64,000 bases of DNA from Utricularia gibba (GCA_002189035.1 NEEC01000009.1:1488001-1552000); one strand, 5' to 3'; shown: positions 1,813 through 36,007, counted from the first letter of the stretch. The notes: generated by a model not told the origin, from the sequence alone. Translations and numbers: made by a program.

Positions 1813-4800
1813 ATGGCTCAAGGGGATAAAATGTCGGCGACTGTATGTGTGATTGTGCTTTTGGGATGTGTTACGCAGTTCTCCGCTGCAGCCAACGTGA
1901 CGTATGACAACCGTGCGGTGGTGGTCGACGGCCGGAGGCGGCTTCTGGTTTCCGGATCCATTCATTACCCTCGCAGCACCCCTGAAGTTAGTCTTTTGTT
2001 GCTATAAAAATGAAAACTTGAGCTTCGATTATTGGTGGGTTCTTGATTCCCAATGTGAAACAGATGTGGCCAGATTTGGTTCGCAAGACCAAGGAAGGAG
2101 GTTTGGATGTGATTCAAACCTATGTTTTCTGGAACTTGCACGAACCTGTTAGAGGCCAGGTTACCATATTCCTTTTATCTTTCCCTTCATCACTAAAGAA
2201 GTCGAATTGAGGGGTTTGTGTTGAAATGCTTTTGGACTAATTCGTGTCATTGTGTAGTACGACTTTGAGGGAAGGAAGGATCTGGTGAGGTTCGTGAAAG
2301 TAGTTCAGGAAGCAGGTCTCCTGGTTAATCTTCGCATTGGACCCTATGTGTGCGCTGAATGGAATTACGGGTTTGAATCTACATGACTCTGTTGCTCTTC
2401 TTTGGTTTCAGCTGTGATGATACTGGGTATGAATCCTGTTTTCCTTTTCTTCTTATGAAGTGGGTTTCCCGTGTGGCTGCATTTGATACCAGGAATCGCA
2501 TTTCGAACTGATAATGAACCATTCAAGGTGGGTGATCATGTTCAATGTCTGCTCACTGAGTCCTGCAATTGAATGCTAGAAATATGGTGTTTCTTCTTGA
2601 CTTACAGGCGGAAATGAAGCGATTTACAGCCAAGATTGTGGACTTGATGAAGCAAGAAGGTCTGTATGCTTCCCAAGGAGGGCCTATAATTCTGTCTCAG
2701 GTGAGGAAGAGTCTTGTAATCCCCTGATTCTTTCAGCATTCTGGTAACCTTGTCTGGATTGTGTCCTTCTACCATTGCCAGATTGAAAACGAGTATGCGG
2801 ACATTTCTTCTCCTTATGGTAGTGCTGCAAAATCATACGTAAACTGGGCTGCATCAATGGCAGTGTCATTGGACACGGGTGTCCCATGGACGATGTGCCA
2901 GCAGCGTGATGCTCCTGATCCTATCGTATGTCAACTCATACTGGTTGTTGCTGAAGTCGATTCAAGGTGGGATGGAACAACTCATCTGCTCTTCTGTTTC
3001 GAATTCCTGCAGATAAATACTTGCAATGGGTTCTACTGCGATCAGTTCACTCCCAATTCCATCAAGAAGCCCAAGCTTTGGACAGAGAACTGGAGTGGAT
3101 GGTATGCATTTTGTGATTCCTTGATTCTGCTCAGAGTTTCTGAACGGCAGCATACCACCAGGTTTTCTTCCTTCGGAAATGCACGGCCATACAGGCCTTC
3201 TGAGGACCTTGCCTTTGCGGTGGCTCGTTTCTACCAACTCGGTGGCACTTTCCAGAACTACTACATGGTAACTAGACTCCCTCCTTTTACCTGTATTGTT
3301 CTGTGCAGCATTGATTCTGTCTTGAGATCCTTAGAAAGCTTTTCAACAGTACCATGGTGGGACTAACTTTGGGAGAACCTCCGGGGGACCTTTCATCACA
3401 ACAACTTATGATTATGATGCTCCAATTGATGAGTATGGTATGGAATTTCACGTCTAGCTTCAAGATTCTTAACCTGACCTGTTCTGTTGGGTTGAAGGCC
3501 TTATCCGACAGCCGAAATGGGGTCACCTTAGAGATGTACACAAGGCCATAAAGCTGTGTGAAGATGCATTACTTGCCACTGAACCAAAAACCACATCTCT
3601 TGGAACAAACTTGGAGGTGCTTGTCACTACGCCATTTTGTGAATCAGGCCATGTTTTTTCCTTTCATACAATATCCTGATTCCTGTTTCAGGCGACAGTT
3701 TATGAGACTGAATCAGGGCAATGTGCTGCTTTTCTTGCAAACACGGGAACAGAATCTGGCACGACTGTGAACTTCAGGGGCAGGTCCTATGACTTGCCTG
3801 CTTGGTCTGTCAGTATTTTACCCGACTGCAAAAATGTTGCTCTAAACACTGCTAGAGTATGCATCTCAAGACCATGAAATATTTCTTGTTTCTGCTCACA
3901 CTCTGCTAACATGCACGCATCATTCGGCAGATCAATGCTGTGTCCACCTTGACCAAGTTCATCTATCATCCTTCGAAAGTTGGCACTACAGCTATAGATG
4001 CAAGCCTCTCTGACTGGAGTTGGATAAAAGAACCTGTTGGAATTTCGACAGACGGATTGTTCACAAAGCATGAATTGCTGGAGCAGATAAAAACCACTGC
4101 GGATCACAGTGACTACCTGTGGTATTCTACGAGGTGAGAAATTCTCCTAAATCATCACTTTATCTACCAAAAAAATACCAGATCCTAAAATTTCTTCACC
4201 AGCTCAGCATTGAGACAGAAGATGGCCATCAGGCATCTCTTCATGTTGACTCCCTTGGCCACGTGCTTCATGCCTTTTTGAATGGGAAATTTGTTGGGAG
4301 CGGGAAAGGAAATCCAGGCAACATCAAAGTTTCGATAGACATTCCTGTGACTCTTGTTGCTGGAAGAAACCAGATAGATCTCTTGAGTGTGACAGTGGGA
4401 TTGCAGGTATAGATTCTGTGAGTGACAGTCTGCCATGTATTCTCTGATTTTTTTTTTTTTTTTTTTTTACTCCAATCTTGTTGATGCAGAACTACGGGTC
4501 ATTCTTTGACATAATCGGAGCAGGTGTTACTGGCCCTGTGCAGCTTAAAGGCCTGCAGAATGGATCAGCCATTGATCTATCCACCCAGGAGTGGTCATAT
4601 CAGGTCATACTCCTCAAGCTGGTTGTGTGCATATTAAACACGTGTCTAGAAGCCATGAATAGCTTTCAACTTTGGAACAACTGTCTTGTTTGATTCCCAG
4701 ATTGGTCTGGAAGGAGAAGAGCAAGGCTTCTCCAATGGAGGCTCCTCATTGTGGACAGCACAATCTGATTTACCAAAGAATCAACCTTTGGTATGGTATA

Positions 4801-5599
4801 AGGTAAGATTTTTCTGCTGGATGTACTTTCAAATGCAGTAAATCATCTGTTGCATCCTGCTCGATAGACTACCTTCGATGCCCCGGTGGAAGCAGCCCTG
4901 TTGCAATAGACTTCACCGGCATGGGAAAAGGCATAGCATGGGTGAATGGGGAAAGCATCGGGCGATACTGGCCAACAAACGTAGCTAGTAATGCTGGCTG
5001 CTCTGATTCTTGCAACTACAGAGGTTCCTATAGCTCCAACAAATGTCTGAAGAACTGTGGAAAGCCTTCTCAGCAGCTGTAAGACCCCAAGTGAATTCCT
5101 GATGATATGTATATATAAAACGATGGTCTTTTTAACTTTGTCTTCATTTCAGCTACCATGTCCCCCGGTCTTGGCTCAAGCCAAATGGAAACATCCTTGT
5201 TCTGTTCGAGGAAACCGGAGGTGATCCCACAAAACTAGCTTTCGCCACACGTGAAACGCAGCGCGTGTGTGCTGTGGTTTCTGAGAGCCACCCTTCCCCA
5301 GTTGAAACATTCATAGAAGAAAGGACAGGAGCAACAGGAGAATCTGGCCCTGTTCTTTCCATTGCCTGCCCTCAACAAAGCAAGTGATATCCAAATTCAA
5401 CTTCGTAAGCTTTGGAACCCCTCAAGGAACTTGTGGGAGCCTGAGCCACGGACAATGCAGCAGCGAAACCGCTCGTCCCATCATTGAGAAGACATGCCTG
5501 GGATTAAGAAATTGCAGCGTTAGAGTCTCTACAAGTCTTTTTGGTAAACCGTGCAGGGGAATCATGCACAGTTTAGCTGTCGATGCTTCATGCACATAA
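1813..5599 (+). CDS. BGAL8: GH35 beta-galactosidase with C-terminal SUEL lectin domain, BGAL8-like; multi-exon; two apparent -1 frameshifts
   Basis: Signal peptide then [31 protein letters not shown]; spliced exons give [58 protein letters not shown] and end [13 protein letters not shown] sites traced for most exons. Frame breaks at ~4881-4884 and ~5382. Confidence 0.93.
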
Positions 5600-6059: not shown

Positions 6060-7084
6060 ATGTTTCAGACTTTTCCGGGAGTGTTAGCGGCGGTGGCGCA
6101 TCTCTCTGCTGGTGGTATCGCGGCGGTCCTGGTAGACTTTGACTATACTCACAACCCAACATTTCAGTCCGATAAGCAGCCGCAGTTGACCACTAAGGCT
6201 GTACCCTTCACCCTCCGATTGCGATCGTCTTGGTTGTTGTCGTTGCAGCACTATTTGCCTGCGTAACCTGTTGTATCTGCATCCGTCACCGCCGCAGATC
6301 CAATGTTTCCGTTGCGGATTTGCACACCGCCGCCACGCAGAAGTGTGGGCTGGGTCGGGAAGACATTGACGCGTTCCCAGCATTCTATTACTCTGAAGTC
6401 AAGGATCGTAAGATCGGGATGGGCGCGTTGGAGTGCGCCGTGTGCCTGATCGAGTTCGAGGATGCAGACAAGCTTACATTGTTGCCTAAGTGTGATCATG
6501 TTTTCCATACGGAGTGTATCGGCGATTGGCTAGAGCACCACATCACGTGCCCTGTTTGCCGATCGGATTTGACGGAGGCAGCGACGGACGAGATTACGAA
6601 GAATGATGAGAGCGGTTTTAGGCAAGGTGAGATCGCCTTACAAGTGGATGAAATTCAAATGGCGGACGGCGAAACCGTCGGAAAACAGAAAGCGTTCGAT
6701 ATGTCGAAGTTCAGATCTCACACCACCGGCCATTCTCTTGCGGTTTCCGGGGAGAATTTTGACCGATTCACTCTGAAATTGCCCACCGGAGTGAGGAAGG
6801 AGGTTATGAAGCGCTCTTCAATGAACCGAACCAGAAGCTCCGTCTCCGGGAAATCCGGCTTCAATGGCGAAAGTGATCGCCGCAGCGCAAGCTTTAACCA
6901 ATGGTTCCGGAGGTCGATGAAGTCAGATCGACAGGCCATTTTCACAAGAACGATTTCGATGTTTTCTCCGAAAGCAGAGACCGACGGCGGCGGTGGAAGC
7001 AGCGATTTCCGTGGTGGCGGCCGCGCGACCAGGAGAACTAAATCTCTTAAAATGTTGAACCGCCAAGACGTGAATGAGTTATGA
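6060..7084 (+). CDS. ATL-family RING-H2 E3 ligase (ATL6/ATL31-like), intronless; apparent -1 frameshift at ~6211
   Basis: Hydrophobic [13 protein letters not shown] segment, GLD-like [16 protein letters not shown]2 CAVC...CDHVFHTEC...CPVC, and C-terminal RSHTTGHS / DRFTLKLP motifs. The N-terminal ATG at 6060 is in a different frame from the 6230..7084 ORF. Confidence 0.85.
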
Positions 7085-7273: not shown

Positions 7274-10200
7274 ATGGACACCAACGATGCCGCCGGTTTA
7301 TCGGAAGTCGCCGTAACTTCTGCCTCTGGCGGCGCTGTTGAATTTCCAGAGAAGAGGAAGCGGGAATCGGAGACTGAGCCGAATGCCCAAGCAGATGCGG
7401 CTCCTCAGCCGCGTCATCCACTGTGGAAAACAAGCCTCTGTTCCTACTACCGGAGCAATGGGGGATCATGTCGTCATGGAGACTCATGTAGGTTCGCTCA
7501 CACCGAGGAGGAGCTCCGGGTACGGCCGGATAACACATGGGACCCGACTTCCGAGCGCGCTAAGAAGATGGCAAAGACGGAAGTGAATGAAGCGGAAGAA
7601 GAAGAAGCTGTTATGATGACGGAAGCGTTAGAGGAGGGAGGTAATTTTTCCGGCGGCTTGTCGAGATGTTTTGTCAATTTGCCTATGAAGTGGACTTCGG
7701 ATAACTTGAGGAACTTCCTTAACGAGAAGGTTGCAACTTCGCTTCTAAGAACGCATTTGAATTATGGGCACTTGACAATTTCTGGTGAATTGCTCATGAA
7801 TAGGATTGTTTGAACTATATTCTATCAATAGCCATTGTTATTGCTACAGGCGGTTCCCTTTGTGTCGGCCAAGAAGAAGAAGGGCATGATTGCTGGATTT
7901 GTTGCTTTTGAAACTGCCGAGCAAGCGAAGGCTGCGGCAGAAGTATGTATCTTCAATCACATTTTATTTCTAGGATTCACAAAATTGAGAAGTAGCTTTT
8001 TATCTCGTTGAATGTTCAGGAGCTGAATGGGACATCCATTGGCAATAACAGAACTTTGAAGGTTGCGGATGTTCTTCCACGATCATTCGAGAAAAATAAC
8101 AAAGTTACATTACCTCAGATGTCCAACCAGACCATAGAAGATCCATTGCCAGACAGCGATCCTGCTAGTTTAAAGAAGGATACCAACAATGATGAAGCTG
8201 AGTTCGATGATCTTAGTTTGGCTGGAAATTGTTCCATCTTAAAGGGTAGAACCGCCCGTGCTGTTGTGACTCCTCTTGCTGACATGCCCTACCCTGATCA
8301 ATTGGAACACAAGAAAAATTCTCTAGCACAATTGCTTAAAAAACTTGTTAGTAACTCCTCTGCATTTGATGAACCGATTTTACTTCTTTTACTCATTAAA
8401 TCTTGCACATAGTCTATTGGAATCATTACTTATGCTTTGCATTTATAGACTAGAAATGCTCGAAAGGCTTGTGGAAATGGTATCATACTTCCCGAGTGGA
8501 TCCAGAAATCTAGAGAAAGAGGTAACAGAGCTGAGTATGGAGCAATTTTATTATTTCTTGAATATTTAAACATGGTAAAGAAGCTGAAATGTCTAATAAT
8601 TTTTTCACCTGACTTGACTGCTGACATGTAGGCGGTCTTCCTTGTAACTTTGAGGGTATAATTGAATCACCTATTGTTTTTGGATACCGCAACAAGTGTG
8701 AGTTCTCAGTTGGACATTCTTTGGATGGAAAATGCACAGTTGGTTTTTTGTTGGGAAACTTCAGGTGATCTGTGGCTAACAAGAGTTTATGTTATTTAAG
8801 TTGTCTTCTAAAACCGAGAAATATGAGTATATGTTGTGCAGGGAGGGTGTCACAGCTGTTGAGGAACCAGTGAACTGTCCAAATGTTTCCCAAATTGCCT
8901 GCAAATATGCCCGCCTCTTTCAAGAATTTTTACAGAATTCCTGCTTTCCTATTTGGAACAGATTGAACAATACTGGATTCTGGCGCCAACTTACGGTACA
9001 TTTCATGAAATTGTAACAAAGTTGCAATATTGTCAAGTTTCTTCTTACACTATGGATTTTTCAGAATAAATGTTTGTGCGCTTTTAACTAGGTTCGTGAA
9101 GGCAGGAAACCATATAGCAACGTTGTAGATGGAGAACCTGTCATCTCAGAGGTCATGCTCATAGTTCAGGTATGCCTGCATTTTTTGCTTTGTTAAACAG
9201 CTGTCCAGTAGACTCACTCCAGGTATCATAGTTCTTTGCTTTGGGATAATCTCTGTGCACCATGTGCTTGCCGTTCAAAGATCTTCTTTGCTTTCTGAAT
9301 CCTATTCCGTTCCATCCAAAAAAAATCGTTCGGATATAGGTGTGCACAGTTGGCTTTGAGGAGACACAAGTAAAGGATGAAATCGAGCGCTTGAAAAATG
9401 CATTCTCTTTGGGATCTGCGGAAGAAACTCCTCATTTGCCTCTTTCAAAACTTGTGATTCAGGTGAGAATTTGAAAGCCGATAAGTTTAGGATTAAGATA
9501 CGTGTTATTTTTGTGCTACTACACTCTGCTGCTTCATCTCACCCTTTAGCTCCGCATTAGATTGTAGTCCCTTGATTGAATGAATCACAACAATTTAATT
9601 TCTTTCATAATTGTGCAGGATCATACTGGAATATCAAATGTGGCACCTTCTGACGCCAATCTCAGATACGTGTTCATCTCCAGAGAAGGAGACTCTGGAC
9701 TCAGTCTTGCTGATGATAGTGTTGAACCAAGAATTCATGATCATATTAGCAAACTGAGATTTTCCATCTCCCCATCTGCTTTCTTTCAGGTAAATCACAT
9801 AATCATATTTTTTAGAATTCGGGTAGTGTTGTCTTTCCCCAATAGCAATGAAAAAAAGATGGTTTCCTTGAATCACTCTATATTAATGCCTTTCGCCACC
9901 TCTCAGGTTAACACACTTGCTGCCGAGAAATTGTATTCTCTTGCTGGGGACTGGGTTGGCTTAGGGCCGGACACATTGCTCTTTGACATTTGCTGTGGCA
10001 CTGGGACAATTGGTGTTACGTTAGCCCATCGTGTTGGTATGGTAATGATTGAATGCTCACTTTGGGATCTTCCTTCACCCTCTTGCCCATTCTTCTTTGT
10101 CTACTGTGAATCTGATCGCTAAGATGATCCCACAGGTCGTTGGTATTGAAATGAACGCCTCTGCAGTTCTGGACGCTCAAAGAAACGCAGAGATCAACGG

Positions 10201-11000
10201 CACGAAAAACTGCAGATTTGTCTGTGGGAAGGTTGGCTTTCCTTCCCGGAGAATTGGAACATGTGTTAGGTCCCTTAATGTTTTCTCTCGTGTTACAGGC
10301 TGAGGATGTTATCGGTCAGCTGATGAAGCAGTATCATGTATCCCCTGCTCAAAATCCCGACAATGAACCGCGGGACTCCGGTGAGGCGGTTGACGGTGCT
10401 CCTGAGTCGGAGGCTAGCAGCCGCACCATCAATGGCTCGGAAAAGAATAGCAAGAGCGCGGAGGACGAAACCTGTTCGCCCCAGCAATTCAAAAACGTCG
10501 TAGCTATAGTGGATCCGCCTCGTGCGGGACTGCACCCCACTGTGAGTACCATTCTGTACCGTTTCGGTTTCATATCCCCCGGCATGACTAATCCTCGGAC
10601 GCTGCGATCCGAGTGCAGGTGATCAAGGTCTTGCGGACGCAGTCTCAGCTGAAGCAGCTCGTGTAAGTTGATCATTCTCATCCAATACACAATCTCTCCT
10701 CGCTCCAACACCCCATTGAAGCCATTCTTATGATCCAGCTACATTTCCTGTAACCCGGAAAGTCTGGTCGCAAACGCCATCGAGCTCTGCACGCCATCCC
10801 CGCCCGTCGACGACGGGGGCAATGACAAGAAGAAGAACAACAGGATGCGTGGATGGAAGAACATGACTGCTGCAAGTCTAGCCAGGCACCGTGCCAAGTC
10901 CATGCCCAACTCCGAGCCGTTCACCCCGGTGAAAGCCATGGCGGTGGATCTTTTCCCCCACACCCCACACTGCGAACTAGTCATGCTTCTCCAAAGGTAA
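7274..11000 (+). CDS. CCCH zinc-finger / TrmA-family tRNA (uracil-5-)-methyltransferase (TRM2-like)
   Basis: WKTSLCSYY...CRHGDSCRFAH CCCH finger; SAM-binding LFDICCGTGTIG; IVDPPRAGLH; catalytic YISCNP; ends DLFPHTPHCELVMLLQR*. The exons traced splice in phase. Confidence 0.92.
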
Positions 11001-12401: not shown

Positions 12402-15341
12402 TCAGAGCTCATCCTTGGGAACGGGAGCTTCTCTGGGTTTCTCTCGTTGCAGTTTAAATGGGATTGAAGCGTGCTTCTTCAAGAACTTGTAGAGTTCCAC
12501 CACGGTTCGGTCTGTATCTACCGTGATCTACAGGTGAATATCCTCAGGGTGAGAGATCAAAACATCTGGAAAATAAGTATTCTTCTGAAGGGTGATGAAT
12601 ATGCTTACTGGATCAGAGCTTTTCTTTCCGGCGGGGAAGAACAAAATAGTGGGGAATCCATCAGGCTGCGTTGAAAACGCTCATTTTGAGATTGAAAACA
12701 GATGGCATGCCAAAAAGTATGCAAGTATGAAAGGCAGGAATGTGGGTACCTTGGCTCTTGGGTGTTCATTCGTTGTTCCGTCCATTTTTGCTATCACTAG
12801 GGATTCAATGCCATGAAGGTGTTTGGCTAGTTTATTGTAAGTTGGTTCCAGAGCTTGGCAATGTGAACACCAGGGTGCATATAACTAAAATTGGAGAAAA
12901 CAAGGGGTTCAAGAGATATACAGTGTTCCTTGTTTTCGCCAGATGATGGCATTGGTACCTCAAGAAGAACATCTTTGGACTCATCCAGCACAATGTCATC
13001 AAAATTATTGCCCACAACTACCTTGACATCATCATCATTCTACGTCCAATGGAAAAGGAGGAAATCAAGATGACTACCTTGATAGTTATCCTTGTAAAAA
13101 AAAAAAAACTGTATTACTCACTGTCTCAGGTATTGGATCTGATTTGTAAAAGGGCTTTAGACTATCTTCCAGGAAAGCATCTCCGAATGCCTGAACAAAA
13201 TTAAAAAAACAAAAAACGTATTTTTTCAAGGAAAGGTGACCTCATCCACACAAAAGGTGCAAATAAAGAACGATTCCAAATAAAAGGAGACAAAGGAGTT
13301 GTGGAACAAAAAAGTAGGCAACTAAGACATTTAAAGGAATCGATATGCTAAAGGAATGAGCTCAGAAATTCAAAATGTAACTCCACCTTGATTTTCTCCA
13401 CTGTAATATCTCCTTCCAGGAAGTACTTTTTGGTATCATCACCTGCCTCAAACCCCAAAATCTAGAAAAAAGTATTCAACGCTGGGATATCAGAAATCAG
13501 TTCTATGCAGTAGTTAATGAAAGGAAGTAAGTTGACTAGGAAGGTGAATGAATACTTTGGGATCATCTCCACTGACTCCAAAAAAATCAGCCACAGGCTT
13601 TCCTACTTCTTCATTGTCTACTTCAATATATACAAATATAAGCTGCAATAAAAAAAAAAAAAAACAGTGTTAGAGTTGTATAACCATGCTCCAGGGAACT
13701 TCAGCAAAAACTAATTCACATTTAAGTAAATGATGGCAGCAATGCATATGGCATTAGCGCAAAGCATGTGATGCAGCAATGTAACAGGGTTAAGCAAAAT
13801 CAGTTGCATTAGCATCCTTCTAGAAAATAGGCATAGTTACTCTACCTTTCCCTTAAAAGGCTTTGCTGCTTCTTGAAATGTCGTAAAGACTGGCTTTGAG
13901 TTATTTGATGAAGCAAACAGCAAAATCTGATGATAAAAGCATGAAGTGCTATAGATGTCACCATAAAAAAACATGTATAAAAATGTCCTACGCAACAAAA
14001 CACACAAAACATGAGTAAGAGAATGAAAATAAATTAGCCGTTAACCTGCTTCTTAATTGAGCTACCAAATATCAAAGCTGAACTTTCTCGAGTGAAAGTG
14101 GTCACTAAGGGAAGCTTGTTTGCAGAAACAAACTCAGCAATCAAAGCCTTCTTGAACAACCCATCTACACAAGCATATCAAAAGCAATCACCAAAATGTA
14201 AAACATTACCTAAAAGCATGAACTGGTAATACCACTCACCGAAGTAATTCACTTTCTCAGCCTCCTTCTTCAACAAGACCAAAGCTGGGCGTTTGACATC
14301 AGCTTCAAAGTGAAACATCTTTGCCACATTGAGGTTATCAGTTTGGTAAAATGTGACATCATTATCAAGCTTAGATGCAGCTGATAACTCGTCTGAATCA
14401 CGACCTGCAATAATTTTACATATTTACATGACTTACAGACAATTGCTCAATGAAAGAGTGCCCACCCCACACCATGTAGCATCAAGTTTTGGATTTCAAC
14501 ACATCGTGCAAGGAATTCGGATACTTACATACAGTATCTCGAGGAAGCCCAAAACAACTGTCGTTTCAGATGTCAACACTCTTTCTGCTTCCTCCGTAGT
14601 TGTTAAGTTCGATACGCCTGGCCCGATTTTCTTCCGAATCCAGGCTGTGATGGCATCTCTGCGTTTCCGATTAAAAAGAAAAAATCTCGAATTTAACTTA
14701 AATCAGACAAAACTGAAACTTTTCAGCATCTTTCAGCAGAAATGAGACCCCATTTAACACAAGGAAACAGCTCACTTGGTGCGTTGACCAGAATACGGCC
14801 TATGATCTCCATCAACGAAGAAGAACAGAGTAGGAAATCCCTGAACCTCATACTCATCAGAAAGCTCACTCTCTTCCGTGGCATCTACCTTAGCCAGTTT
14901 CACATTCTCCTCTTTCAGCTCCGTAGCAGCGCCTGCAAACTCCGGAGCCAAGGCCTGGCAATGCCCACACCATGGAGCATAAAACTCCACCAGTACATAC
15001 TTATTCTCGTCGACAAAATCGCTAAAATTACCGCTAGTCAGAACAACGACATCCTTCTCATCGATTTCCGGAACACCATCCGTATCCTCGGATCCGATAT
15101 CCGAATGGGCCTCGAGATCCTCGTAATTCTCATACTCATCATCATCCCCATCCTCAAAATCAGATTCCACACCGTCTTCATCACCGCCAGGTACGGCGCC
15201 CTGCGGCTCCGCCTCTTCGAGGAACCTGAGATCCTCGTCATCATCCTCTATTACTGCGCTCCCGCCGTGAGTGTGGTAAGGAATGAGGGAAAACACGAGC
15301 AGGAAGGCGAGTGTGAAGAGAATCAGACGAGCAGCCGCCAT
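12402..15341 (-). CDS. PDIL1-4: Protein disulfide isomerase, PDIL1-3/1-4 type; one splice-phase inconsistency near 14404
   Basis: Signal peptide, acidic N-terminal extension, [18 protein letters not shown] thioredoxin site; last exon [41 protein letters not shown] with an ER-retention KDEL. Confidence 0.92.
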
Positions 15342-15931
15342 GCTCACTGAAGGAAAGCCGAGATCCGCCACCGGGAAGACCTCAGAATTTTCTCCATTTA
15401 TAATTTAAATCTAATTTCCCGAAATGTACAATTTTTTACATTAAATTACTTTTTCCACAGTAAGAAAATGGAAAGGACACGACAACATTGTCACTTGATT
15501 TATGGTCAGAAATAAATTTGTAAACTTTAACATTGTAATAACACATTTTAATGCTTTTTAGAGATTTTTTTTTTATTTTCGATAACGAAAAATCACATAA
15601 GATCAATGCAACCGACAGGGTCATAGGACCAATGCAAGTATAATTAACTTTCTGTAACAAAAATTTAATGTATCAAGGGCGTGGGTACGCAGATCGGCAT
15701 TATTGCAAGTGGGCGCTAATTGCTAGGGTTGAAACCATCGGCGTCGTTTAATCAGAAGTCAATAACGCCGCCGCGCCGGCCACCGCGCTACATTTAAGGG
15801 ACCTCACTCGGCTATTAAAGAAAGTGTACTGCCAAGGTCTAGGCGAAAATTTCAACTTGGGAAGTCTAGAAAAAGGTATGAGAAACCAGGATACCGGTGA
15901 GTAGAATTGGGAAGTTTGAAAGCGTTCACGT

Positions 15932-17659: not shown

Positions 17660-20600
17660 ATGCTCCCTCGCTCGCCTTCAACGTCGGGATCGTTGAACGG
17701 CGATGATCGGGGCTGCCTCGACGATATGGATAGGGAACGTAACCCCGATCCAATTGACCTTTCTCTGGACGCCATCGAGAACCAGCTGGCATCAATTTCG
17801 ATGTCTTCTCGTTCAAATGGAGAAAAGGTAGAACCCCCGGTGGAGCAATTGACCATTGGAAAAGCGTTGGCAAATGAAGAATTTGATCTGGATCGAGCGG
17901 ACGGCTATTACGCGGAAGAGGATGTGGATAGTGACTGTAATACCGAGCCTTCGCAGATGATCAAGGAAGCCTCCTCGTCTGTGAGAAACAATTTTGATGT
18001 TGATGAAGTTGATCCGCGGTGGAGCCCCAGCAGCAGTGGTTATGCTGCGGAGAGAGGGAGCACAAGCGGCGGCGATGAGATCAATGAGGACGAGGGGAGC
18101 CGAAGTGAGATCCGCCAGGTAGAAAAGGGAGAAGTTTATCGGCCACCCGAACAGTGGCTTTCTGGAAAACGCGGCGGCGATCAGGTTAGCTTGAAAAGGT
18201 TTTAAGATCGAGATTTAGCACAAATTTATGAAGTTTACTGATGACATATTTTATCGGATTGTGGAAAACTGAAAGGGGATTTTTAGAAAAGCTATCTGCC
18301 AGTGTTAAAGAAACAACGCAATCTAAATGTCCTGTAGAATGATGTCTGCATGTTAGCTGTTTTACATGTATTGATTTGAGTTATTACTGAGCTGCAGGAC
18401 GATGCTTCAATTGCGTGGAGGAAGAGAAAGAAGCACTTTTTTATCTTGAGTCATTCTGGGAAACCTGTATATTCCAGGTTCATATCCATCAATTTTTAAT
18501 TTATCAGGAAGGACACCATTGTTGTGTGAGAACTATATGAAGTGAAGATCTGTGTGAACTCTTTATTTAGATATGGAGACGAGCACAAGCTAGCTGGATT
18601 TTCTGCAACTTTGCAAGCTATCATCTCCTTTGTTGAAAATAAGTAGGCTGCCTCTATCTGCTATATGCATTGAGCGTTTCATTGCATGCAGTGTTATGTA
18701 GCTTACAAATAAACATATAAATTTCTAGGGGAGACAGGGTGAAATTGGTTAGAGCTGGTAAACATCAGGTGAATATCTATCTATTCGTTTGAGACTTTAT
18801 ATTTCATCATTCTTCCACTATTTATTCCTTAGGTGACTTTTTATTATTTAGTGTTGTCACATCCTAGTAAGGTATGAAAGATCATCTATCGACATTTCTT
18901 TGATGGAAAAGGTTTCAAACCGAATATGGAAGTTTAAAATGAGGAACATAATTTTAAAGATTCATGCTGATAATCTTTTTGTAACTTCTTTTTGCTTAAT
19001 TTTATTATTTGAACCTTATGTTCCAGATTGTTTTTCTCGTAAAGGGGCCATTATATTTGGTCTGCATAAGTTGTACTGGAGAAAATTTTGAAGCATTAAA
19101 GGGGCAGCTAGAGCTCCTCTATAGTCAGGTATATTGTCCCATATGTGGTTAAGACATAGATCCTGGTTCATTAATTGTATCAGGAATCCGTGCGTTGTCT
19201 ATTTTTCCTAGTTCAATATCAATCGCTTGTTGAAGGGATTCCTTTATCCTTTATTTTTTGAATGCAGATGATAGTGATTCTGACAAAGTCTGTGAATCGA
19301 TGTTTTGAGAAGAATCCAAAGTTCGATATGACTTCTCTACTTGGAGGGACTGATGTTGTCTTCTCTTCTCTCATCCATTCTTTCAGTTGGTATTTCCTTT
19401 GCTGCAGTGTTCATACTAAAGTAACGTAGGTTCACATCAGTTGTCTTCCTGACGATGGTGTTTTATCATTGTCCATTTTTGTTTTTGATATAGGAATCCT
19501 GCTACTTTTCTGCATGCATACTCTTGTATTCGCGTTCCCTTAGCAATACGCCAAGCTGCTAGTTCTATTCTTCTAGATGTTGCTAGTTCAGGAGTCTTGT
19601 TTGCACTCTTGATGTGTAAAGACAAGGTAATTGCTTACTTCTGCTCCTGTATTGAAAGTTAAGTCTTGGAATTTCTGAATAACTAGATTCATGAACTAAA
19701 TCGCATTATAGGTCATCAGTCTTGTTGGTGCCCAAAAAGCATCCCTTCATCCCGATGATATACTCCTGTTGGCTAACTTTATCACCTCTTCTGAGTCTTT
19801 CAGGTTAGTTGATTTTTCTTTCTTACAACTCTTGTGTGCTTCATTTGTGAACAGGGATTGAAAATGTGAATTCATATGTTAGAATTTACATTGAAACATG
19901 AGAGAGAATTAAGAAAGCATCTAGTATCCACCTTATGTTCATTGATATAATTTCGGAAAACATCTTTAATGTTCTTATCGGTGCATGCAGGACATTTGAA
20001 TCTTTCTCTCCAATTTGCCTTCCAAAATATAATCCCATGGCATTTCTATATGCTTATGTCCATTACTTTGATGTAAGTTGCAGTAAGTTCTAAGATGTGT
20101 CCTCTAGATTTTCATGGAATCAGTGCTCCACCAAATTGGCGGAGCAGTTGATCTTTATGTATTATTAGTTATTTCCTTTATTTCACTTTATATGATATTC
20201 ATTATACATCAGCTGACTGTGAACATTATATCTGATGGCAGATTGACACGTACCTGATTCTGCTCACTACTAGGTCAGATGACTTTTATCATCTCAAAGA
20301 CAGCAGGTACTGAGTTATTTTATCAGGAGAGGAATCGGAAATGAATCTGTCTACAAATAGAATATTTGTGAAATCTAGGGGTGAGGAATAAATTGACTTT
20401 GCTGCTCCTGCAATAGTTTTAAATATCAGATTGAATCCTGCTTTCACTTGCATCTTTAAGCGCCATTGGTGTTTTGGAAATATGATGCTTGTTTGATAGA
20501 AAGCCCCCTTTTGAGTTTCTTCTGCCAACCTGACCAGCATAGCTTATTGCCATGATTTATCATCAAAAGGAGACGTGTGCTGCATCTTACAGGATTCAAA

Positions 20601-30793: not shown

Positions 30794-31978
30794 CAGATAT
30801 GTTTTCCCCTAAAAAATCAAACAAAAATCCCATTGAGAGAATAGCATTCAAAAGCATGTATGAACCACCAAAGAATTGAATTACTAAAGAAGAATTGAAT
30901 TGATAATGAAAATCACCCAAAACCAATAAAGATAAACCCTTTTTTAGGTCATCTTTTTAGAATCCTAACATAAGAGATTTTGGAGTTTACCTTGTGAAAG
31001 TAGCTTATGAGAAGTGGGCGGTTATGAGAATTCAAATCTATCAAAATCTTATATTGTGTATAAAACATAATAATTCATCATTAGTTAAAGTATGATAAAA
31101 AATAAAACAGAAAAGACAAAATACATAATATGGATAATAATTAGAATTTAATTATTTAAATGAGAATACTAATTCCAAAAATCCATAAGAATGTTATATC
31201 ATACTTTAAAACAAAATATTTTCTCCCTAAGCAAAGTACGAGAGAGAGAGAGAAATCTGCTCGTGTTGTGTCTCTCTCTATTGGCAGTTGCGACAATCTT
31301 GGAAGCTGACGTTGTAACAGTGAGAAAAGATGATAGAGGCAACCAGGTGATGTGGTAACAGGAACTCGGACACTAGCTTTTGGTATGCTTTTCAGTGTCT
31401 TGCATGAGCCACTGGTTTCAAGAACTGAGTCTGGAAAAATCTGGACTCACAGAACCCCTCGGGATTAATATGCTGGAGGACATTTTTAGCTGGTAGTTCT
31501 TGACAACAGTCTGAAAACTTCACTAATCTTCAAAGGCTGGTTTAGCTACGGGAAAGATGATCAGAACAAAGCAGATAAAATCAATAATGATCACATAATT
31601 CTTCACACAAGCATGTAAGGTAGCATCCAGACATATCCCTCCGGAATCATTTTAGTGGGAGGAGCAGTATGCCCGACACGGCGGAGCAGGGGGAAACAGA
31701 AAACTACAGAAGAAGAGGGGTGGCCGCAATGGCAAGACAGGCGATGTAGAAATTTCATTTCATTTCATTTTCATCCTTTGTTTTTTCAAATTTTTTGTAA
31801 TCTTAAATTTAATATGTATGCATGTAACATTGCATTGTTTTGATCATACACTATAGGGAAAGCTGATGGTTCATGTTTCTAAAGAGAGAGAATGGCATCA
31901 TACATCCCATGGTACGCAGCTCTGTACTGCTGAAAACTAGCAATGCTTGTGGTTCACAGGAAACCGTTGTAGGGAAAG

Positions 31979-33384
31979 CTAGAACCAGGGGTGTCCAGAG
32001 CGAATCAGGTTGGATGTTAACCTGGAAAGATCGCTCAGGAAGCCTTTTTTCAGCTTACTTGGAGATGGGTCTTCACAGGCTGATGGGACTGAGCTTCCCT
32101 TGTAAGCGTTGCAGATGTATGTTATGAAGTTTGTGTAGTCCTGTTGCACAAGACAATGAAATCATCAAAGCTCGATATTGACCCTATCCTGCTCATATGC
32201 AGGCTAACTTTCATTAGCTTCATCAAGGGATCAGCAACTTGATAGCAAGTTTTCAAATTGAGGCTGCTTGCTTCTGAAGGAACATGCATACTTACTTCAT
32301 ACAGTGGTTGCCCGTCTACAACCACCCAAGGCACATATTTATGGGGTGGTTGGAGTGCGTTTGTTTCTGCTGCATATTTGAGTTCAAGCTGCACAGAAAC
32401 GACTCGACTGAACATGTATCTGGTGAATTAATGTGAATCTGAAGGTGATTTGGGTAAGAGGTAGAGAAACAAACCTCTGTTCCTTGCCCACTTTTGTAAC
32501 AATCAGCAACAGAAGATGCATCCAGGCCAAGTTGCTCGAAACATGTCTCCCAGTAGGTGTAGTTGTGGTGATATACGAGGCTTTCCACACAGTAAATAAA
32601 TGGAAAATGCACATTCTGTAGAATTTGACACCAAGCAGTGTCAGCAATGACCTTTTACAGCGAAAGAAAACATCATTATCCAGAAAATGCTAACCACATC
32701 AGGCCAGGCATCAATGGCACAGGCCTCAACAGTATTCAAAAGGCATTCATTTGCTCCATGCTGCCAATAACAAGACATTAATATTCAGTTGAAAGCGAAA
32801 TATGTAGTGCAAACGCAACAAGGAAGAGACACCAAGCGAAATATAACATCCATGATGGTTTGCCTTTTAGAAAGTGACCAAGGAACGTAAATGAAAAGAC
32901 CACAACAAAACAGTGATCGATAAATAGACAAACGAATGAAGTTTGAACACATTTTTGCTTCTACTATTCAAAGAGAAAGTGCAGTTCGGCTAGCTCTCAC
33001 AAGATCCGTGATGGCTGTCAGCAATAAACATTAACTTCCCCTTTGTCCCAGGGCACCAAAATATATAACAAGTTTAAACAGAGCTGACCGCTCACAAAAA
33101 CTAACATAGAGGGTTAACTATAAAAAGACCTGGCACTTGAACTCATGGCTGCCAAGAAGTTTCGCATTGCCCCAGGGCACAAGATTCAGATCAACAACGT
33201 CAATCAACCCATTAGTGAACAACAAAGCTAAAGAATCGACAATAAATCCAGCACTGTAAGGACAAAGGCTTTCATAGTATAAACCAACAGAGACTCTACT
33301 GCATGAAATAGAAGAAACTAGTGATGCCAGAAGCAGCAACTGAAGATTCTTTAGGGAGCGAGAGCAAGCCATAGCAGAAGGCAT
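31979..33384 (-). CDS. GILT: GILT (gamma-interferon-inducible lysosomal thiol reductase)-like protein using first exon B (CPYS)
   Basis: Exon B 33384/33372-33130 (LYYESLCPYSAGFI...VPWGNAK...FKCQ); exon 2 32760-32695 HGANECLLNTVEACAIDAWPDV; exon 3 32615-32475; exon 4 32388-32296 PPHKYVPWVVVDGQPLYE; exon 5 DYTNFITYICNAYKG. The 3' end is less certain. Confidence 0.88.
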
Positions 33385-33618
33385 GGAAGTGGGAGTTCCA
33401 AGAATCGAAGATGAAGATATTTGGGAAAAATGGGTTCCAAGAAAACCCCCCAAAAATGCTCACATGTGTATCTTGTTAGCTCATCGTGGCAATTTTAATG
33501 TGTGCCACTAGTTCATATCCCATTGGTTGATTTCCCTAGAGCCAGCCATATCTTCCCAACTAAATCACGGAAAAGCAAGACAAACAGCTATGGACTATGA
33601 AATGAAACAGAGGAGTAC

Positions 33619-33855
33619 CTGACATTTGATGGTGCCGTCGGCAGCGATTTTTGCGTTTCCGTAAGGTAGTAGCTTCAGATCAGTGATTGGTGCGAGCCCG
33701 GAATCAAAGAGCTTGTTGAGGTAATTGGCGATGAAGTTGGAGCAATACGGGCACAGAGTCTCGTAGTAGAGCTCGAGGGTTACTTTGTCGCCGGTTTCTA
33801 CGGCGGCAGAAGAAACGACGATTGAGATAATGAAGAAGGCCCGAAAAACATTCAT
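33619..33855 (-). CDS. Second GILT first exon (exon A): signal peptide plus CPYC active site; alternative first exon or orphan
   Basis: 79 codons MNVFRAFFIISIVVSSAAVE...LYYETLCPYCSNFI...LLPYGNAK...IKCQ followed by a GT donor at phase 0, the same position as exon B. Confidence 0.8.
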
Positions 33856-33896
33856 GGCGCAAAAGCTCCACCTGTCCTTTCCTTCTTCACAGTCAG

Positions 33897-33903
33897 TTAT
33901 ATA
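33897..33903 (-). promoter_or_regulatory. TATA box upstream of GILT exon A
   Basis: TATATAA on the minus strand ~42 nt upstream of the ATG at 33855; an ACGTG motif lies at ~33946-33950. Confidence 0.55.
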
Positions 33904-34043
33904 GGCAATTTTTTCTACTAATTAAACGCGTTGGAGGCTAGGAATCCACGTAAACCAGAAAAATGTTTCGATGAAGAGAAAGTACAGACAGCTTCAAACA
34001 TAAAACCAGAACAAAAGAATGAAAGCACTTCTGTGGGATCCCT

Positions 34044-36007
34044 TTACACAGCAGAAACCTTGGATTCTTTCTCGGACAGAAGCGGTGTAGTATCTCTTTC
34101 TTTAGTCTGCAAGACAAACTAATGTGAATCAAAATCGCATCTTTTTCCATGTGTGTGGTGTTTGAAGTGTGGTGTATGAAAGTACTTATTCGTACATGAG
34201 CTAAAGATGAAATGTCAACGATCTGCTTCTTCTTTGCCTCGTTGGTGCAAAAATACGAGTACATTCCCATGCCAACAATGGCGATGAGAATCCCCATGAT
34301 GTTTCTTGCAGTGAAGGGATCATGGAGAAGAGTGTATCCAAATGCAAGAACAAGACATGTTTTCAGATGACCCAGAACCTGGTAAGTAACTGGGGAAGTC
34401 TTCCCGATCACTAAGAACGTGCTGAAGTTGACAAACACGGCGATCAAGCATGAAAGTATGATGAATCCCTGAATAAGGAAAACAGGAAAATCTTCATCTT
34501 TGAGTGACAAAGGAGCTCGCAAAGGCTAAAAGAAGGGGCTTTTTACCAAAACAACTGGAGAGTAGGTGAAGCCAAAGACGTTTTGTTTCGTGAGGCATTG
34601 ATCCACAACAGGGCCTGTCAAGAAGAGAATGGCAGCCTGAAATGGGGCTGATTGGTATAGCAGCTGTGTCGAGGAGACGCTGAGTTTCTTCTGTATCGTG
34701 TTGGTTAGCTAAAGCAGGGAAAAGAGCAAACGTAATGAGTGAGTCTAGTTGAGCAAACGACTGGCTTAACCTATAGGAATGATGCTTACGATTTGGCCAA
34801 CACAAGTTGTTATAATCGCAAGAAGGGATAAAACTGTTCCGACGAAGTTTAGCTGAAGATCGGTGACTGAAGCTATCCCAACTCCAAGAAGTAGGACAAA
34901 CAGAGAAAACTTGATCTTCTGGCTGCATCATTACCAGAAAAACAGATATCAGTCGTAAGCATGTTTCTTGAAGCAGAAAAGTAGGCATCTTAGTGACCTG
35001 AATTGTTTATTCAAGAAGAGTGTCTCCAGCAGAACTGTGAAGGGTATAATGGCGAGTTTCGTCATCTGAAAGGGAGAACAAAAACATCAAGAAAGATACA
35101 GTTGCTGCATCCAGCTCTCTAAGGAACAAAAAGTTATATTAGATCACGAACAAGGAAAATGATACAGCACTAGCAATCCGAAGTGCACCTTATCCCAACA
35201 CTTCTACTATTGGGATCTGGTATGAGAGTGCACCTGATAGAATCCGATGGAGTTAAATCCCAAGCTGAGGTTGAGAAGTCCTATTGAAACACCATTCAGA
35301 ATACCAAAAAGGAAGACTGTCCTCCTTTCGATCGGTTTATTTTCAAAGAAGTTCAAGCGCAACGCCACATGAAGGCTGCAGTACGTCACCATCAAGTGCC
35401 AACTAGTGAGCGTCGTTGCTGAGAGTCATAGTGCAAATTCCAATCAGCAAGCAGAGTAGCATACATGAGCATTTTCATTTCATACAGAATCAAAATCAAC
35501 AACCAGGTGTGATCAACTCTATCCAATAGTTAATTAATTTCTTCGACTGAAGTCTCTGATATTTCTCACTGAAAAATCAAAGATTTCTCCAACATACAAA
35601 TGATCCTCTAAAACAACAATTCCATAGAAGAAGATGATTCAAGATACTAAGGAACAGGTATGAAATAAAACTCTTATTATGAATACCAGCAGAATGACGG
35701 CTGATAATGAAACTAAATGAAGCGACCAGCGCGAAATCAGGTGAAAAGAAGCAAGCACTGTGTCTATACGGTTTCGAATTGGACGTTCTACGAACACGTT
35801 GTGAATGAAATGAGCAAGATTCATTACTTTTAAGACAAAATCAATGCTTTAGGAAGAAGACAGGAAAAGGATCAATAACGATTTACCAAACTGAAAGCCG
35901 AGATTACTCATGAGTGCTTTGTTGCAGATGACTATGGATACAGAAGACGCCACCGAAAGAAACAATGCCCCAACAACTCCCAACTGGAATCCCGACGTCT
36001 CTCCCAT
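34044..36007 (-). CDS. Nucleotide-sugar transporter, UDP-xylose transporter (UXT)-like, TPT family
   Basis: MGETSGFQLGVVGALFLSVASSVSIVICNKALMSNLGF; ATTLTSWHL; LNLSLGFNSIGFYQMTKLAIIP; FSTFLVIGKTSPVTYQVLGHLKTCLVL. Confidence 0.92.

What the first reader, a model, noticed from the sequence alone, without database searches (positions are those of the whole stretch)
32695..33903. GILT locus with two first exons (CxxC vs CxxS) and only one set of downstream exons
Exon A (33855-33619) and exon B (33384/33372-33130) each encode a signal peptide plus the N-terminal active-site block, and each ends at KCQ|GT in phase 0. A carries CPYC and B carries CPYS. No exon 2-5 sequence lies in the ~235 nt between them, so both can only join the single exon 2 at 32760. 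Exon A has an intact frame and its own TATATAA and ACGTG motifs, although it sits under 200 nt from the UXT stop. Established: the GILT CxxC is the thiol-reductase site, and CxxS variants lack the resolving Cys. Inference: a tandem duplication may have been compacted into promoter-switched catalytic modules on a shared body, giving two redox chemistries from one gene.
Basis: partly seen in the sequence, partly recalled or inferred. Interest (0 to 1): 0.8.

Follow-up and report, generated by a model that had tools for sequence, protein, structure and literature searches.

The report
GILT gene with CxxC/CxxS first exons
A plant thiol-reductase (GILT) gene has two alternative first exons, one with the full two-cysteine active site and one with a cysteine-serine site; RNA shows both spliced to one shared gene body, and the same layout occurs across flowering plants.

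Summary
On the minus strand, exon 1A (33619-33855, CPYC) and exon 1B (33130-33384, CPYS) each encode a start codon, a hydrophobic N-terminus and the GILT active-site block. Each ends ...KCQ|GT in phase 0. The window holds only one set of exons 2-5.

RNA-derived contigs from three studies carry both joints, 1A->exon 2 and 1B->exon 2. The 1A form is about 4-fold deeper, so exon A is not an orphan. An RNA contig identical to the window spans the A-B spacer, so this is not a misassembly.

The layout is not a product of compaction in this genome. The same order (CPYC exon, CPYS exon, one body) is found in a Lamiales relative, grapevine, tea, Magnolia and Panicum. At least eight other species have annotated protein pairs with identical bodies and CPYC or CPYS N-termini.

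Eudicot A exons and B exons form separate orthologous clades. Both window exons are under purifying selection (dN/dS 0.10 and 0.20). Grasses and Magnolia show younger duplication or gene conversion.

Whether exon 1B has its own promoter in this species is not shown. I found no paper describing this arrangement, although RefSeq isoform X1/X2 models already imply it.

The parts
33897..33903 (-). TATATAA box of the exon 1A promoter
   Evidence: Read. The longest exon A RNA contig ends at 33873, 24-30 nt downstream (X6 record 18).
33619..33873 (-). Exon 1A. CDS 33619-33855 (79 codons: hydrophobic N-terminus plus active-site block), CPYC at 33742-33753, donor at 33619|GT.
   Evidence: Joint 32760<->33619 has depth 60.9 (X1), 180.5 (X5) and 10.8 (X10). 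dN/dS is 0.10 against the Lamiales relative L002.
33385..33618 (-). A-B spacer. It is an intron for the 1A form and the putative promoter and 5'UTR for the 1B form. It holds CCAAT at about -142 and TTAAAAT at about -114 from the B ATG. The exon A frame read through its donor stops at 33595-33597.
   Evidence: It is covered without a break by RNA contigs X1 record 3 and X5 record 13.
33130..33384 (-). Exon 1B CDS (85 codons; second ATG at 33372), CPYS at 33253-33264, donor at 33130|GT. Its 5' end is unknown.
   Evidence: Joint 32760<->33130 has depth 16.1 (X1), 49.1 (X5) and 2.7 (X10). dN/dS is 0.20 against L002. It groups with Lamiales CPYS exons at 99/95 support.
32695..32760 (-). Shared exon 2 (HGANECLLNTVEACAIDAWPDV). 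It completes the CQHGx2ECx2Nx4C signature begun by either first exon.
32475..32615 (-). Shared exon 3
   Evidence: Joints 32615->32695 and 32388->32475 appear in all four runs.
32296..32388 (-). Shared exon 4
   Evidence: Joints in all four runs.
31791..32140 (-). Shared exon 5: CDS to the stop at 31979-31981, then the 3'UTR; poly(A) site near 31791.
   Evidence: Contigs run 31791/31812/31838..32139. X10 has a loose end of T's before 31791, which is a poly(A) tail on the minus strand.
33942..34106 (-). Last exon and 3'UTR of the upstream TPT/EamA-type transporter gene (stop at 34044-34046)

Best explanation
This is one GILT-family gene (PF03227, a thioredoxin-fold thiol reductase of the secretory/vacuolar route) with two alternative coding first exons and a shared body of four exons.

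Exon 1A supplies an N-terminal hydrophobic leader and a dithiol CPYC active site. Exon 1B supplies a different leader and a monothiol CPYS site, which keeps the nucleophilic Cys and lacks the resolving Cys. Each first exon ends at the same phase-0 position, inside the CQ|HG signature, and splices to the same acceptor. The locus therefore makes two proteins that are identical from residue HG onward.

Shown: both splice joints exist in RNA, and the 1A form is the major one. The layout is conserved across angiosperms. Both exons evolve under purifying selection.

Inferred: exon 1B is transcribed from its own start site in the spacer. Also inferred: the CPYS form works by monothiol chemistry, such as stable or glutathione-resolved mixed disulfides or substrate holding, and not as a self-resolving reductase.

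The arrangement most likely arose by tandem duplication of the 5' end of the gene (promoter plus exon 1). It has since been kept, re-created or homogenised repeatedly.
For: RNA evidence:
- Joints 32760->33619 and 32760->33130 are both GT..AG. They occur in contigs of three of four RNA runs from three studies.
- In X1 the body depth of 77.5 roughly equals 60.9 (A joint) plus 16.1 (B joint).
- No A-donor-to-B joint was seen.

Conservation of the layout:
- tblastn finds a CPYC exon, then a CPYS exon, then one set of body exons in the Lamiales relative L002, tea L001, Vitis L003 and Magnolia L005, and Panicum L013.
- Protein pairs with a 100% identical body but CPYC or CPYS N-termini occur in Vitis, Escallonia, Sarracenia, Davidia, Melia, Pistacia, Camellia and Xanthoceras. 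Several are named isoform X1/X2.
- Fused gene models with two modules and one CQHG occur in Leersia, Panicum and Melastoma.

Phylogeny and selection:
- The module tree gives a eudicot B clade at 97/96 and a eudicot A clade at 94/81. Window A sits with Lamiales A exons and window B with Lamiales B exons at 99/95.
- Window against L002: dN/dS is 0.10 for exon A and 0.20 for exon B.
- Variants between runs are mostly synonymous in A (4 of 6) and all synonymous in B (2 of 2).

Evidence bearing on B's own start site:
- CPYS mRNA contigs of other species have short non-coding leaders without exon A.
- L002 has CTATAAATA 60 nt upstream of the B ATG.

Family assignment:
- Orthologues hit mouse GILT 6NWX at E 8e-31, with LCPYC aligned to the LCGAC active site.
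Against: - The exon B contigs in X1 and X5 run unbroken from 33130 to 33648, through the spacer into the last 30 nt of exon A. At least some B-containing RNA therefore starts at the A promoter. On such RNA the A frame stops at 33595-33597, upstream of the B ATG.
- Contig depths cannot separate a B start site from read-through.
- The window's spacer has only a weak TATA-like TTAAAAT.
- In one other species (L006) an A-like exon is spliced directly in front of exon B.
- No protein-level or activity evidence exists here for either form.
- Only assembled contigs were available, not raw reads.
Confidence: 0.8

Rival explanations
1. Exon 1B is not an independent first exon. Transcripts start only at the exon A promoter. 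When the A donor is skipped, the next donor at 33130 is used. The resulting RNA carries a terminated A frame upstream of B and is non-productive (NMD-type), or B is translated only weakly by reinitiation.
For: Contigs X1 record 3 and X5 record 13 are continuous from exon B through the spacer into exon A. The A frame stops 21 nt past its donor. In L006 an A-like exon is joined 8 nt upstream of the B ATG, with the stop and start overlapping as TAATG. The window has no strong TATA box before B.
Against: - The B frame, with its own ATG and hydrophobic leader, is intact. Its dN/dS is 0.20.
- It belongs to a eudicot-wide clade of CPYS first exons.
- CPYS forms are annotated as separate isoforms in many genomes.
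- CPYS forms are found as mRNA contigs with short leaders lacking exon A.
- The Lamiales relative has a canonical TATA box 60 nt before its B ATG.
- In X1 the exon A depth (58.1) matches the A joint alone (60.9) and not A plus B. This is weak evidence, since 5' ends are often under-covered.
Confidence: 0.15
2. Exon A is an orphan remnant of a lost tandem paralogue and is not part of the gene.
For: Its closeness to the upstream gene (188 nt from that gene's stop) first suggested this.
Against: The A->exon 2 joint is the dominant one in three runs. One X10 contig carries exon A plus exons 2-3 (record 9). Exon A has dN/dS 0.10 and clear orthologues.
Confidence: 0.01
3. Assembly artefact: a collapsed tandem pair of full GILT genes, with exons 2-5 missing between A and B.
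For: None found.
Against: An RNA contig with 0 differences spans 33130-33648 exactly as in the window (X1 record 3). The same layout occurs in five independent genome or contig assemblies of other plants.
Confidence: 0.01

Closest known systems
Mammalian GILT (IFI30; mouse structure PDB 6NWX)
   Same: Same family (PF03227). It has a thioredoxin-like active site at the start of the domain, a CQHGx2ECx2Nx4C signature and an N-terminal leader. The orthologue P0244 aligns over 179 residues at E 8e-31.
   Different: As far as I know, the mammalian gene has a single CxxC-encoding 5' end. Here two alternative first exons give a CxxC or a CxxS form.
Plant GILT/OSH1 proteins (PtOSH1, AT1G07080, AT5G01580; PMC7017176)
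   Same: Same family and motifs. PtOSH1 was reported to reduce disulfides and is described with CXXC and CQHGX2ECX2NX4C motifs.
   Different: That paper treats plant GILTs as CXXC proteins. It mentions neither CxxS forms nor alternative first exons.
RefSeq/GenBank isoform pairs of plant GILT (e.g. Davidia X1/X2, Vitis riparia X2, Pistacia vera X2, Magnolia sinica X2)
   Same: Identical bodies with CPYC or CPYS N-termini. The genomic layout is the same in Vitis and Magnolia.
   Different: These are automatic annotations without comment. Several genomes instead carry wrong fused models holding both modules (P0001, P0151, P0152, P0155, P0280, P0301).
Insect monothiol GILT-like proteins (mosGILT, Drosophila GILTs; PMC10775533)
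   Same: CXXS replaces CXXC. The paper discusses more stable mixed disulfides and reduced but possibly retained activity.
   Different: These are stand-alone genes. They are not an alternative exon paired with a CxxC exon on one body.
Variable-first-exon loci (UGT1A, clustered protocadherins) and TXNRD1 alternative N-terminal exons (from my own knowledge)
   Same: Several first exons, each normally with its own promoter, are spliced to common downstream exons. This yields proteins with alternative N-terminal functional modules.
   Different: Here there are only two exons, and the swapped module holds the catalytic redox motif itself. Separate promoters are not yet shown.

Membership tests
GILT family (Pfam PF03227) | Significant match to the GILT profile | tested here: met
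   Exon A peptide scores 46.7 bits and exon B peptide 42.3 bits against a cutoff of 22.4. Full-length orthologues score 110 and 107 bits.
GILT family (Pfam PF03227) | CxxC active-site motif | tested here: met
   This row is for the 1A form: CPYC at 33742-33753, aligned to the LCGAC site of 6NWX through the orthologue. The 1B form has CPYS at 33253-33264, so it does NOT meet this feature. It is a monothiol variant.
GILT family (Pfam PF03227) | Signature CQHGx2ECx2Nx4C | tested here: met
   KCQ|HGANECLLNTVEAC is formed across the exon 1/exon 2 joint for both forms.
GILT family (Pfam PF03227) | N-terminal signal peptide for the secretory/lysosomal-vacuolar route | tested here: inconclusive
   Both first exons begin with a hydrophobic stretch behind the ATG. 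No signal-peptide predictor was available.
GILT family (Pfam PF03227) | Thiol reductase activity | not testable with these tools
   This needs recombinant protein assays.
Alternative-first-exon gene | Two or more first exons, each spliced to one common downstream acceptor and not to each other | tested here: met
   Joints 33619->32760 and 33130->32760 are present. No joint from the A donor into B was seen in four runs.
Alternative-first-exon gene | A separate transcription start for each first exon | tested here: inconclusive
   For A, the TATA box at 33897-33903 and the contig end at 33873 fit a start site. For B, the contigs run on into exon A. Only indirect support comes from relatives.
Conserved (orthologous) exon pair | Same order and type of exons in other species, with each exon grouping with its counterpart | tested here: met
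   Layouts are shown, and the clades. In grasses and Magnolia the two exons are closer to each other than to the eudicot types.

The most novel reading that the evidence does not exclude
Flowering plants are under strong, recurrent selection to make both a dithiol (CPYC) and a monothiol (CPYS) GILT from a single locus. Under this reading, the first-exon pair arose independently, or was re-homogenised while sparing the Cys/Ser codon, in eudicots, grasses and Magnolia. The monothiol form would have a distinct, required role on the same body, for example trapping or handing over substrates, or glutathione-dependent chemistry.
Probability: 0.35. Interest if true: 0.7.

Novelty: new member of a known kind. 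Interest (0 to 1): 0.55.

Why it matters
Plant GILT/OSH1 proteins are little studied and are described in the literature as CxxC reductases. This locus shows that one gene supplies both a CxxC and a CxxS enzyme on an identical scaffold, and does so across angiosperms.

That gives a natural, matched pair for asking what the resolving cysteine does in vivo. It also corrects fused or single-isoform gene models in several genomes. Finally, it offers a clear case of an alternative first exon that switches the catalytic motif itself and not a targeting signal.

Tried and rejected
- The bacterial-type promoter/terminator scan is not meaningful for a plant gene and was ignored.
- I looked for the window's own full-length proteins in the protein collections, to fetch their transcripts. 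Two searches and a BLAST of all fetched proteins found none closer than about 75%. Spliced proteins could not be handed to the tools by reference, and I did not type them in.
- P0003 (a 723-aa grass-like fused model) is not on record for a locus look-up. Panicum P0301 was used instead.
- I tried to decide B's start site from contig depths. Both the 'own start' and the 'read-through' models miss one of the observed depths by 7-25%, so I left it open.
- blastn of the A-B spacer against the spacer of L002 found no conserved block.
- Orphan-exon and misassembly readings were rejected on the RNA joints and the spanning contig.
- Literature searches for GILT with CXXS in plants, with 'alternative first exon', or with CPYS found nothing relevant.

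Full report
**What is there**

On the minus strand the window holds a five-exon GILT-family gene with two candidate first exons.
- Exon 1A: 33619-33855, 79 codons, CPYC at 33742-33753.
- Exon 1B: 33130-33384, 85 codons, second in-frame ATG at 33372, CPYS at 33253-33264.

Each starts with ATG and a hydrophobic stretch. Each ends ...KCQ followed by GT in phase 0. Both peptides match Pfam GILT PF03227 over profile positions 2-57 (E 4.4e-12 and 1e-10).

The shared body is exon 2 (32695-32760), exon 3 (32475-32615), exon 4 (32296-32388) and exon 5 (32140 to the stop at 31979-31981). Exon 2 begins HGANECLLNTVEAC, so either first exon completes the family signature CQHGx2ECx2Nx4C.

tblastn of both spliced proteins against the whole window finds no further GILT-like sequence, and none in the 234-nt spacer between A and B. 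The A and B peptides are 47-48% identical. Their third codon positions are saturated (28% identity) while second positions are 65% identical. They are therefore old, constrained homologues.

TATATAA lies at 33897-33903 and ACGTG at 33947-33951. The stop of the upstream gene (34044-34046) is 188 nt from the A start codon. That upstream gene belongs to the TPT/EamA transporter families.

**Are both exons used?**

Two run searches showed that RNA runs of the same organism hold the locus, exon A included.

All introns of the body appear as GT..AG joints in all four runs. The two diagnostic joints are both present:

| Joint | X1 | X5 | X10 |
|---|---|---|---|
| 32760->33619 (1A to exon 2) | 60.9 | 180.5 | 10.8 |
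| 32760->33130 (1B to exon 2) | 16.1 | 49.1 | 2.7 |

- In X10 one contig carries exon A with exons 2 and 3.
- In X6 the exon A contig ends 16 nt past the donor in exon-2-like letters.
- No joint from the A donor into exon B was reported.
- In X1 the body depth (77.5) roughly equals the sum of the two joints.

Exon A gives the major form.

An RNA contig with no differences from the window spans 33130-33648. This also rules out missing exons between A and B.

The 3' end is marked by a poly(A) loose end at about 31791. The longest exon A contig ends at 33873, 24-30 nt downstream of the TATA box, as expected for a start site.

**Is the layout special to this genome?**

It is not. A full HMMER search with the exon B peptide found 475 relatives. 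CPxS N-termini are common among plant hits, and several gene models carry a CPYC module, then a CPYS module, then only one CQHG body.

Fetching the loci and running tblastn shows the same order in five other assemblies:

| Assembly | CPYC exon | CPYS exon | Exon 2 |
|---|---|---|---|
| Lamiales relative L002 | 272-517 | 1111-1365 | 1526-1594 |
| Tea L001 | 6121-6288 | 14925-15104 | 15563-15655 |
| Grapevine L003 | 3091-3333 | 4278-4472 | 5152-5220 |
| Magnolia sinica L005 | 10040-10258 | 15505-15750 | 20307-20375 |
| Panicum miliaceum L013 | 3082-3276 | 4418-4588 | 4789-4863 |

Among 268 fetched proteins, eight species have pairs with a 100% identical body (110 residues from CQHG) but CPYC or CPYS N-termini. 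These are Vitis, Escallonia, Sarracenia, Davidia, Melia, Pistacia, Camellia and Xanthoceras. Several are labelled isoform X1/X2 by their sources. Leersia, Panicum and Melastoma have fused two-module models. A Brassica locus has only one first exon.

The window's proteins are closest to Lamiales proteins. The A form is 75% identical to Phtheirospermum, and the B form is 74% identical to Paulownia, with Sesamum and Rehmannia also close. The window therefore comes from a Lamiales plant. I did not determine the species.

**History**

A tree of the 56-column N-terminal module has limited resolution. It still separates a eudicot CPYS clade (support 97/96) from a eudicot CPYC clade (94/81).
- Window A sits with Lamiales A exons (Olea, Erythranthe, Phtheirospermum, L002).
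- Window B sits with Lamiales B exons (99/95).
- Grass A and B modules form their own clade (100/90).
- The tree needs at least five Cys/Ser changes. These include CPYC 'revertants' inside the B clade (Brassica, Nicotiana).

Within-locus A-versus-B synonymous divergence varies widely:

| Locus | dS, A vs B |
|---|---|
| Window | saturated |
| L002 | 4.3 |
| Tea | 1.23 |
| Vitis | 0.89 |
| Panicum | 0.27 |
| Magnolia | 0.155 |

In Magnolia the similarity extends about 700 nt upstream and about 230 nt into the intron at 80-83% identity. The duplicated unit there is the promoter-proximal region plus exon 1.

So the eudicot pair is old. Grasses and Magnolia show either younger independent 5'-end duplications or gene conversion that spared the Cys/Ser codon. 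The origin is a partial (5') duplication. I found no evidence for a full tandem gene later stripped of exons 2-5, and the arrangement has nothing to do with compaction in this genome.

**Constraint**

Between the window and L002, dN/dS values are:

| Exon | dN/dS |
|---|---|
| Exon A core | 0.10 |
| Exon B core | 0.20 |
| Exon 2 | 0.06 |
| Exon 3 | 0.04 |

Differences between runs are 4 synonymous and 2 conservative changes in exon A, and 2 synonymous changes in exon B, one of them in the active-site Cys codon. Exon 3 has 2 synonymous changes, and the C-terminal tail has 4 replacements. Both first exons behave as coding sequence.

**How it most likely works**

Shown: one locus yields two mRNAs that differ only in the first coding exon.

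From established knowledge of thioredoxin-fold enzymes: the first Cys of CxxC attacks the substrate disulfide, and the second resolves the mixed disulfide. CxxS forms keep the attack but need an external thiol, or they hold the substrate. For GILT-like proteins of insects this is discussed in PMC10775533.

Inferred: the 1A product is the conventional reductase. An orthologue aligns to mouse GILT 6NWX, with LCPYC on the LCGAC site. The 1B product is a monothiol variant on the same scaffold. The mature part of exon 1B has no additional Cys compared with exon 1A, so nothing in it replaces the resolving Cys (alignment).

**Open point: the promoter of 1B**

The exon B contigs of X1 and X5 continue through the spacer into the last 30 nt of exon A. 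Some B-containing RNA therefore begins at the A promoter. On that RNA the A frame stops at 33595-33597, and B would be a downstream frame.

Contig depths do not decide between this and a B start in the spacer. Each model misses one observed depth.

Indirect support for a separate start:
- B has a conserved ATG and leader.
- Three other plants have CPYS mRNA contigs with 60-176-nt non-coding leaders lacking any exon A sequence.
- L002 has CTATAAATA 60 nt upstream of its B ATG. The window has only TTAAAAT at -114 and CCAAT at -142.

Evidence pointing the other way: in one rosid-like transcript contig (L006), an A-like exon (CPDS) is spliced 8 nt upstream of the B ATG, with the stop and start overlapping as TAATG.

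I put about 0.65 on a separate B start site in this species.

**Comparison with what is known, and novelty**

The family is known, and so is the architecture (alternative first exons on a common body). The isoform pairs are already implicit in automatic annotations of other plants.

I found no paper that describes CxxC/CxxS alternative first exons in GILT. The one plant GILT paper I read describes the family as CXXC proteins (PMC7017176).

I therefore file this as a new member of a known kind. It is real, conserved and of moderate interest. Two notes of this scan on the same genome report other tandem first exons, in an aldo-keto reductase and in NAGS. I did not test them.

**Limits**

Only assembled contigs could be laid, not raw reads, and only once. 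No start-site, protein or activity data were available. The module tree rests on 56 columns.

Noticed in passing
window 33603-33619 (X6 contig end): In run X6 the exon A contig carries 16 loose letters past the donor. They match exon 2 for 13 nt and then read CTG instead of AAT. This could be a contig-end artefact or a variant junction; it is unexplained.
   Followed up: no
window 33740-34106: X5 record 16 is one contig running from the upstream transporter gene's last exon through its 3'UTR into exon A. It has an AT insertion at 33894 and an 8-nt deletion at 33907, right beside the TATA box. This suggests read-through or overlapping transcripts, and a promoter polymorphism between strains.
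   Followed up: no
window 33619-33769: Run X5 holds a second, minor exon A contig (depth 43.4 against 186.5) with 6-7 differences in 151 nt (4 synonymous, 2 conservative). It may be a divergent allele, strain or close paralogue.
   Followed up: partly
L006 1-215 (Logan SRR19790907 contig): In another plant, an A-like first exon with CPDS is spliced to a site 8 nt before the ATG of the CPYS exon. The upstream frame's TAA overlaps the B ATG (TAATG). P0002 is the unspliced in-frame version.
   Followed up: partly
L001 15563-15655 and 16974-17066 (tea): Exon 2 is duplicated in this tea assembly. The gene model P0001 includes both copies and both first exons, giving a repeated HGPLECLLNTVEACAISVWPDL.
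   Followed up: no
L014 5097-5279 (Brassica carinata); P0278 (Nicotiana): Here a single first exon of B-type ancestry (PWG-type, inside the eudicot CPYS clade) carries CPYC. The Ser/Cys position has therefore flipped back in some lineages, and Brassica has lost the two-exon layout at this locus.
   Followed up: partly
window 31982-32100 (exon 5 tail): All four coding differences between runs in the C-terminal tail are replacements (S>P, F>I, D>E, S>P). Those in exons 1B and 3 are synonymous, so the tail looks weakly constrained.
   Followed up: no
same genome, outside this window: Earlier first-reader notes of this scan report tandem, mutually exclusive first exons in an aldo-keto reductase and in NAGS in the same genome. 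This is a possible recurring theme and was not checked.
   Followed up: no
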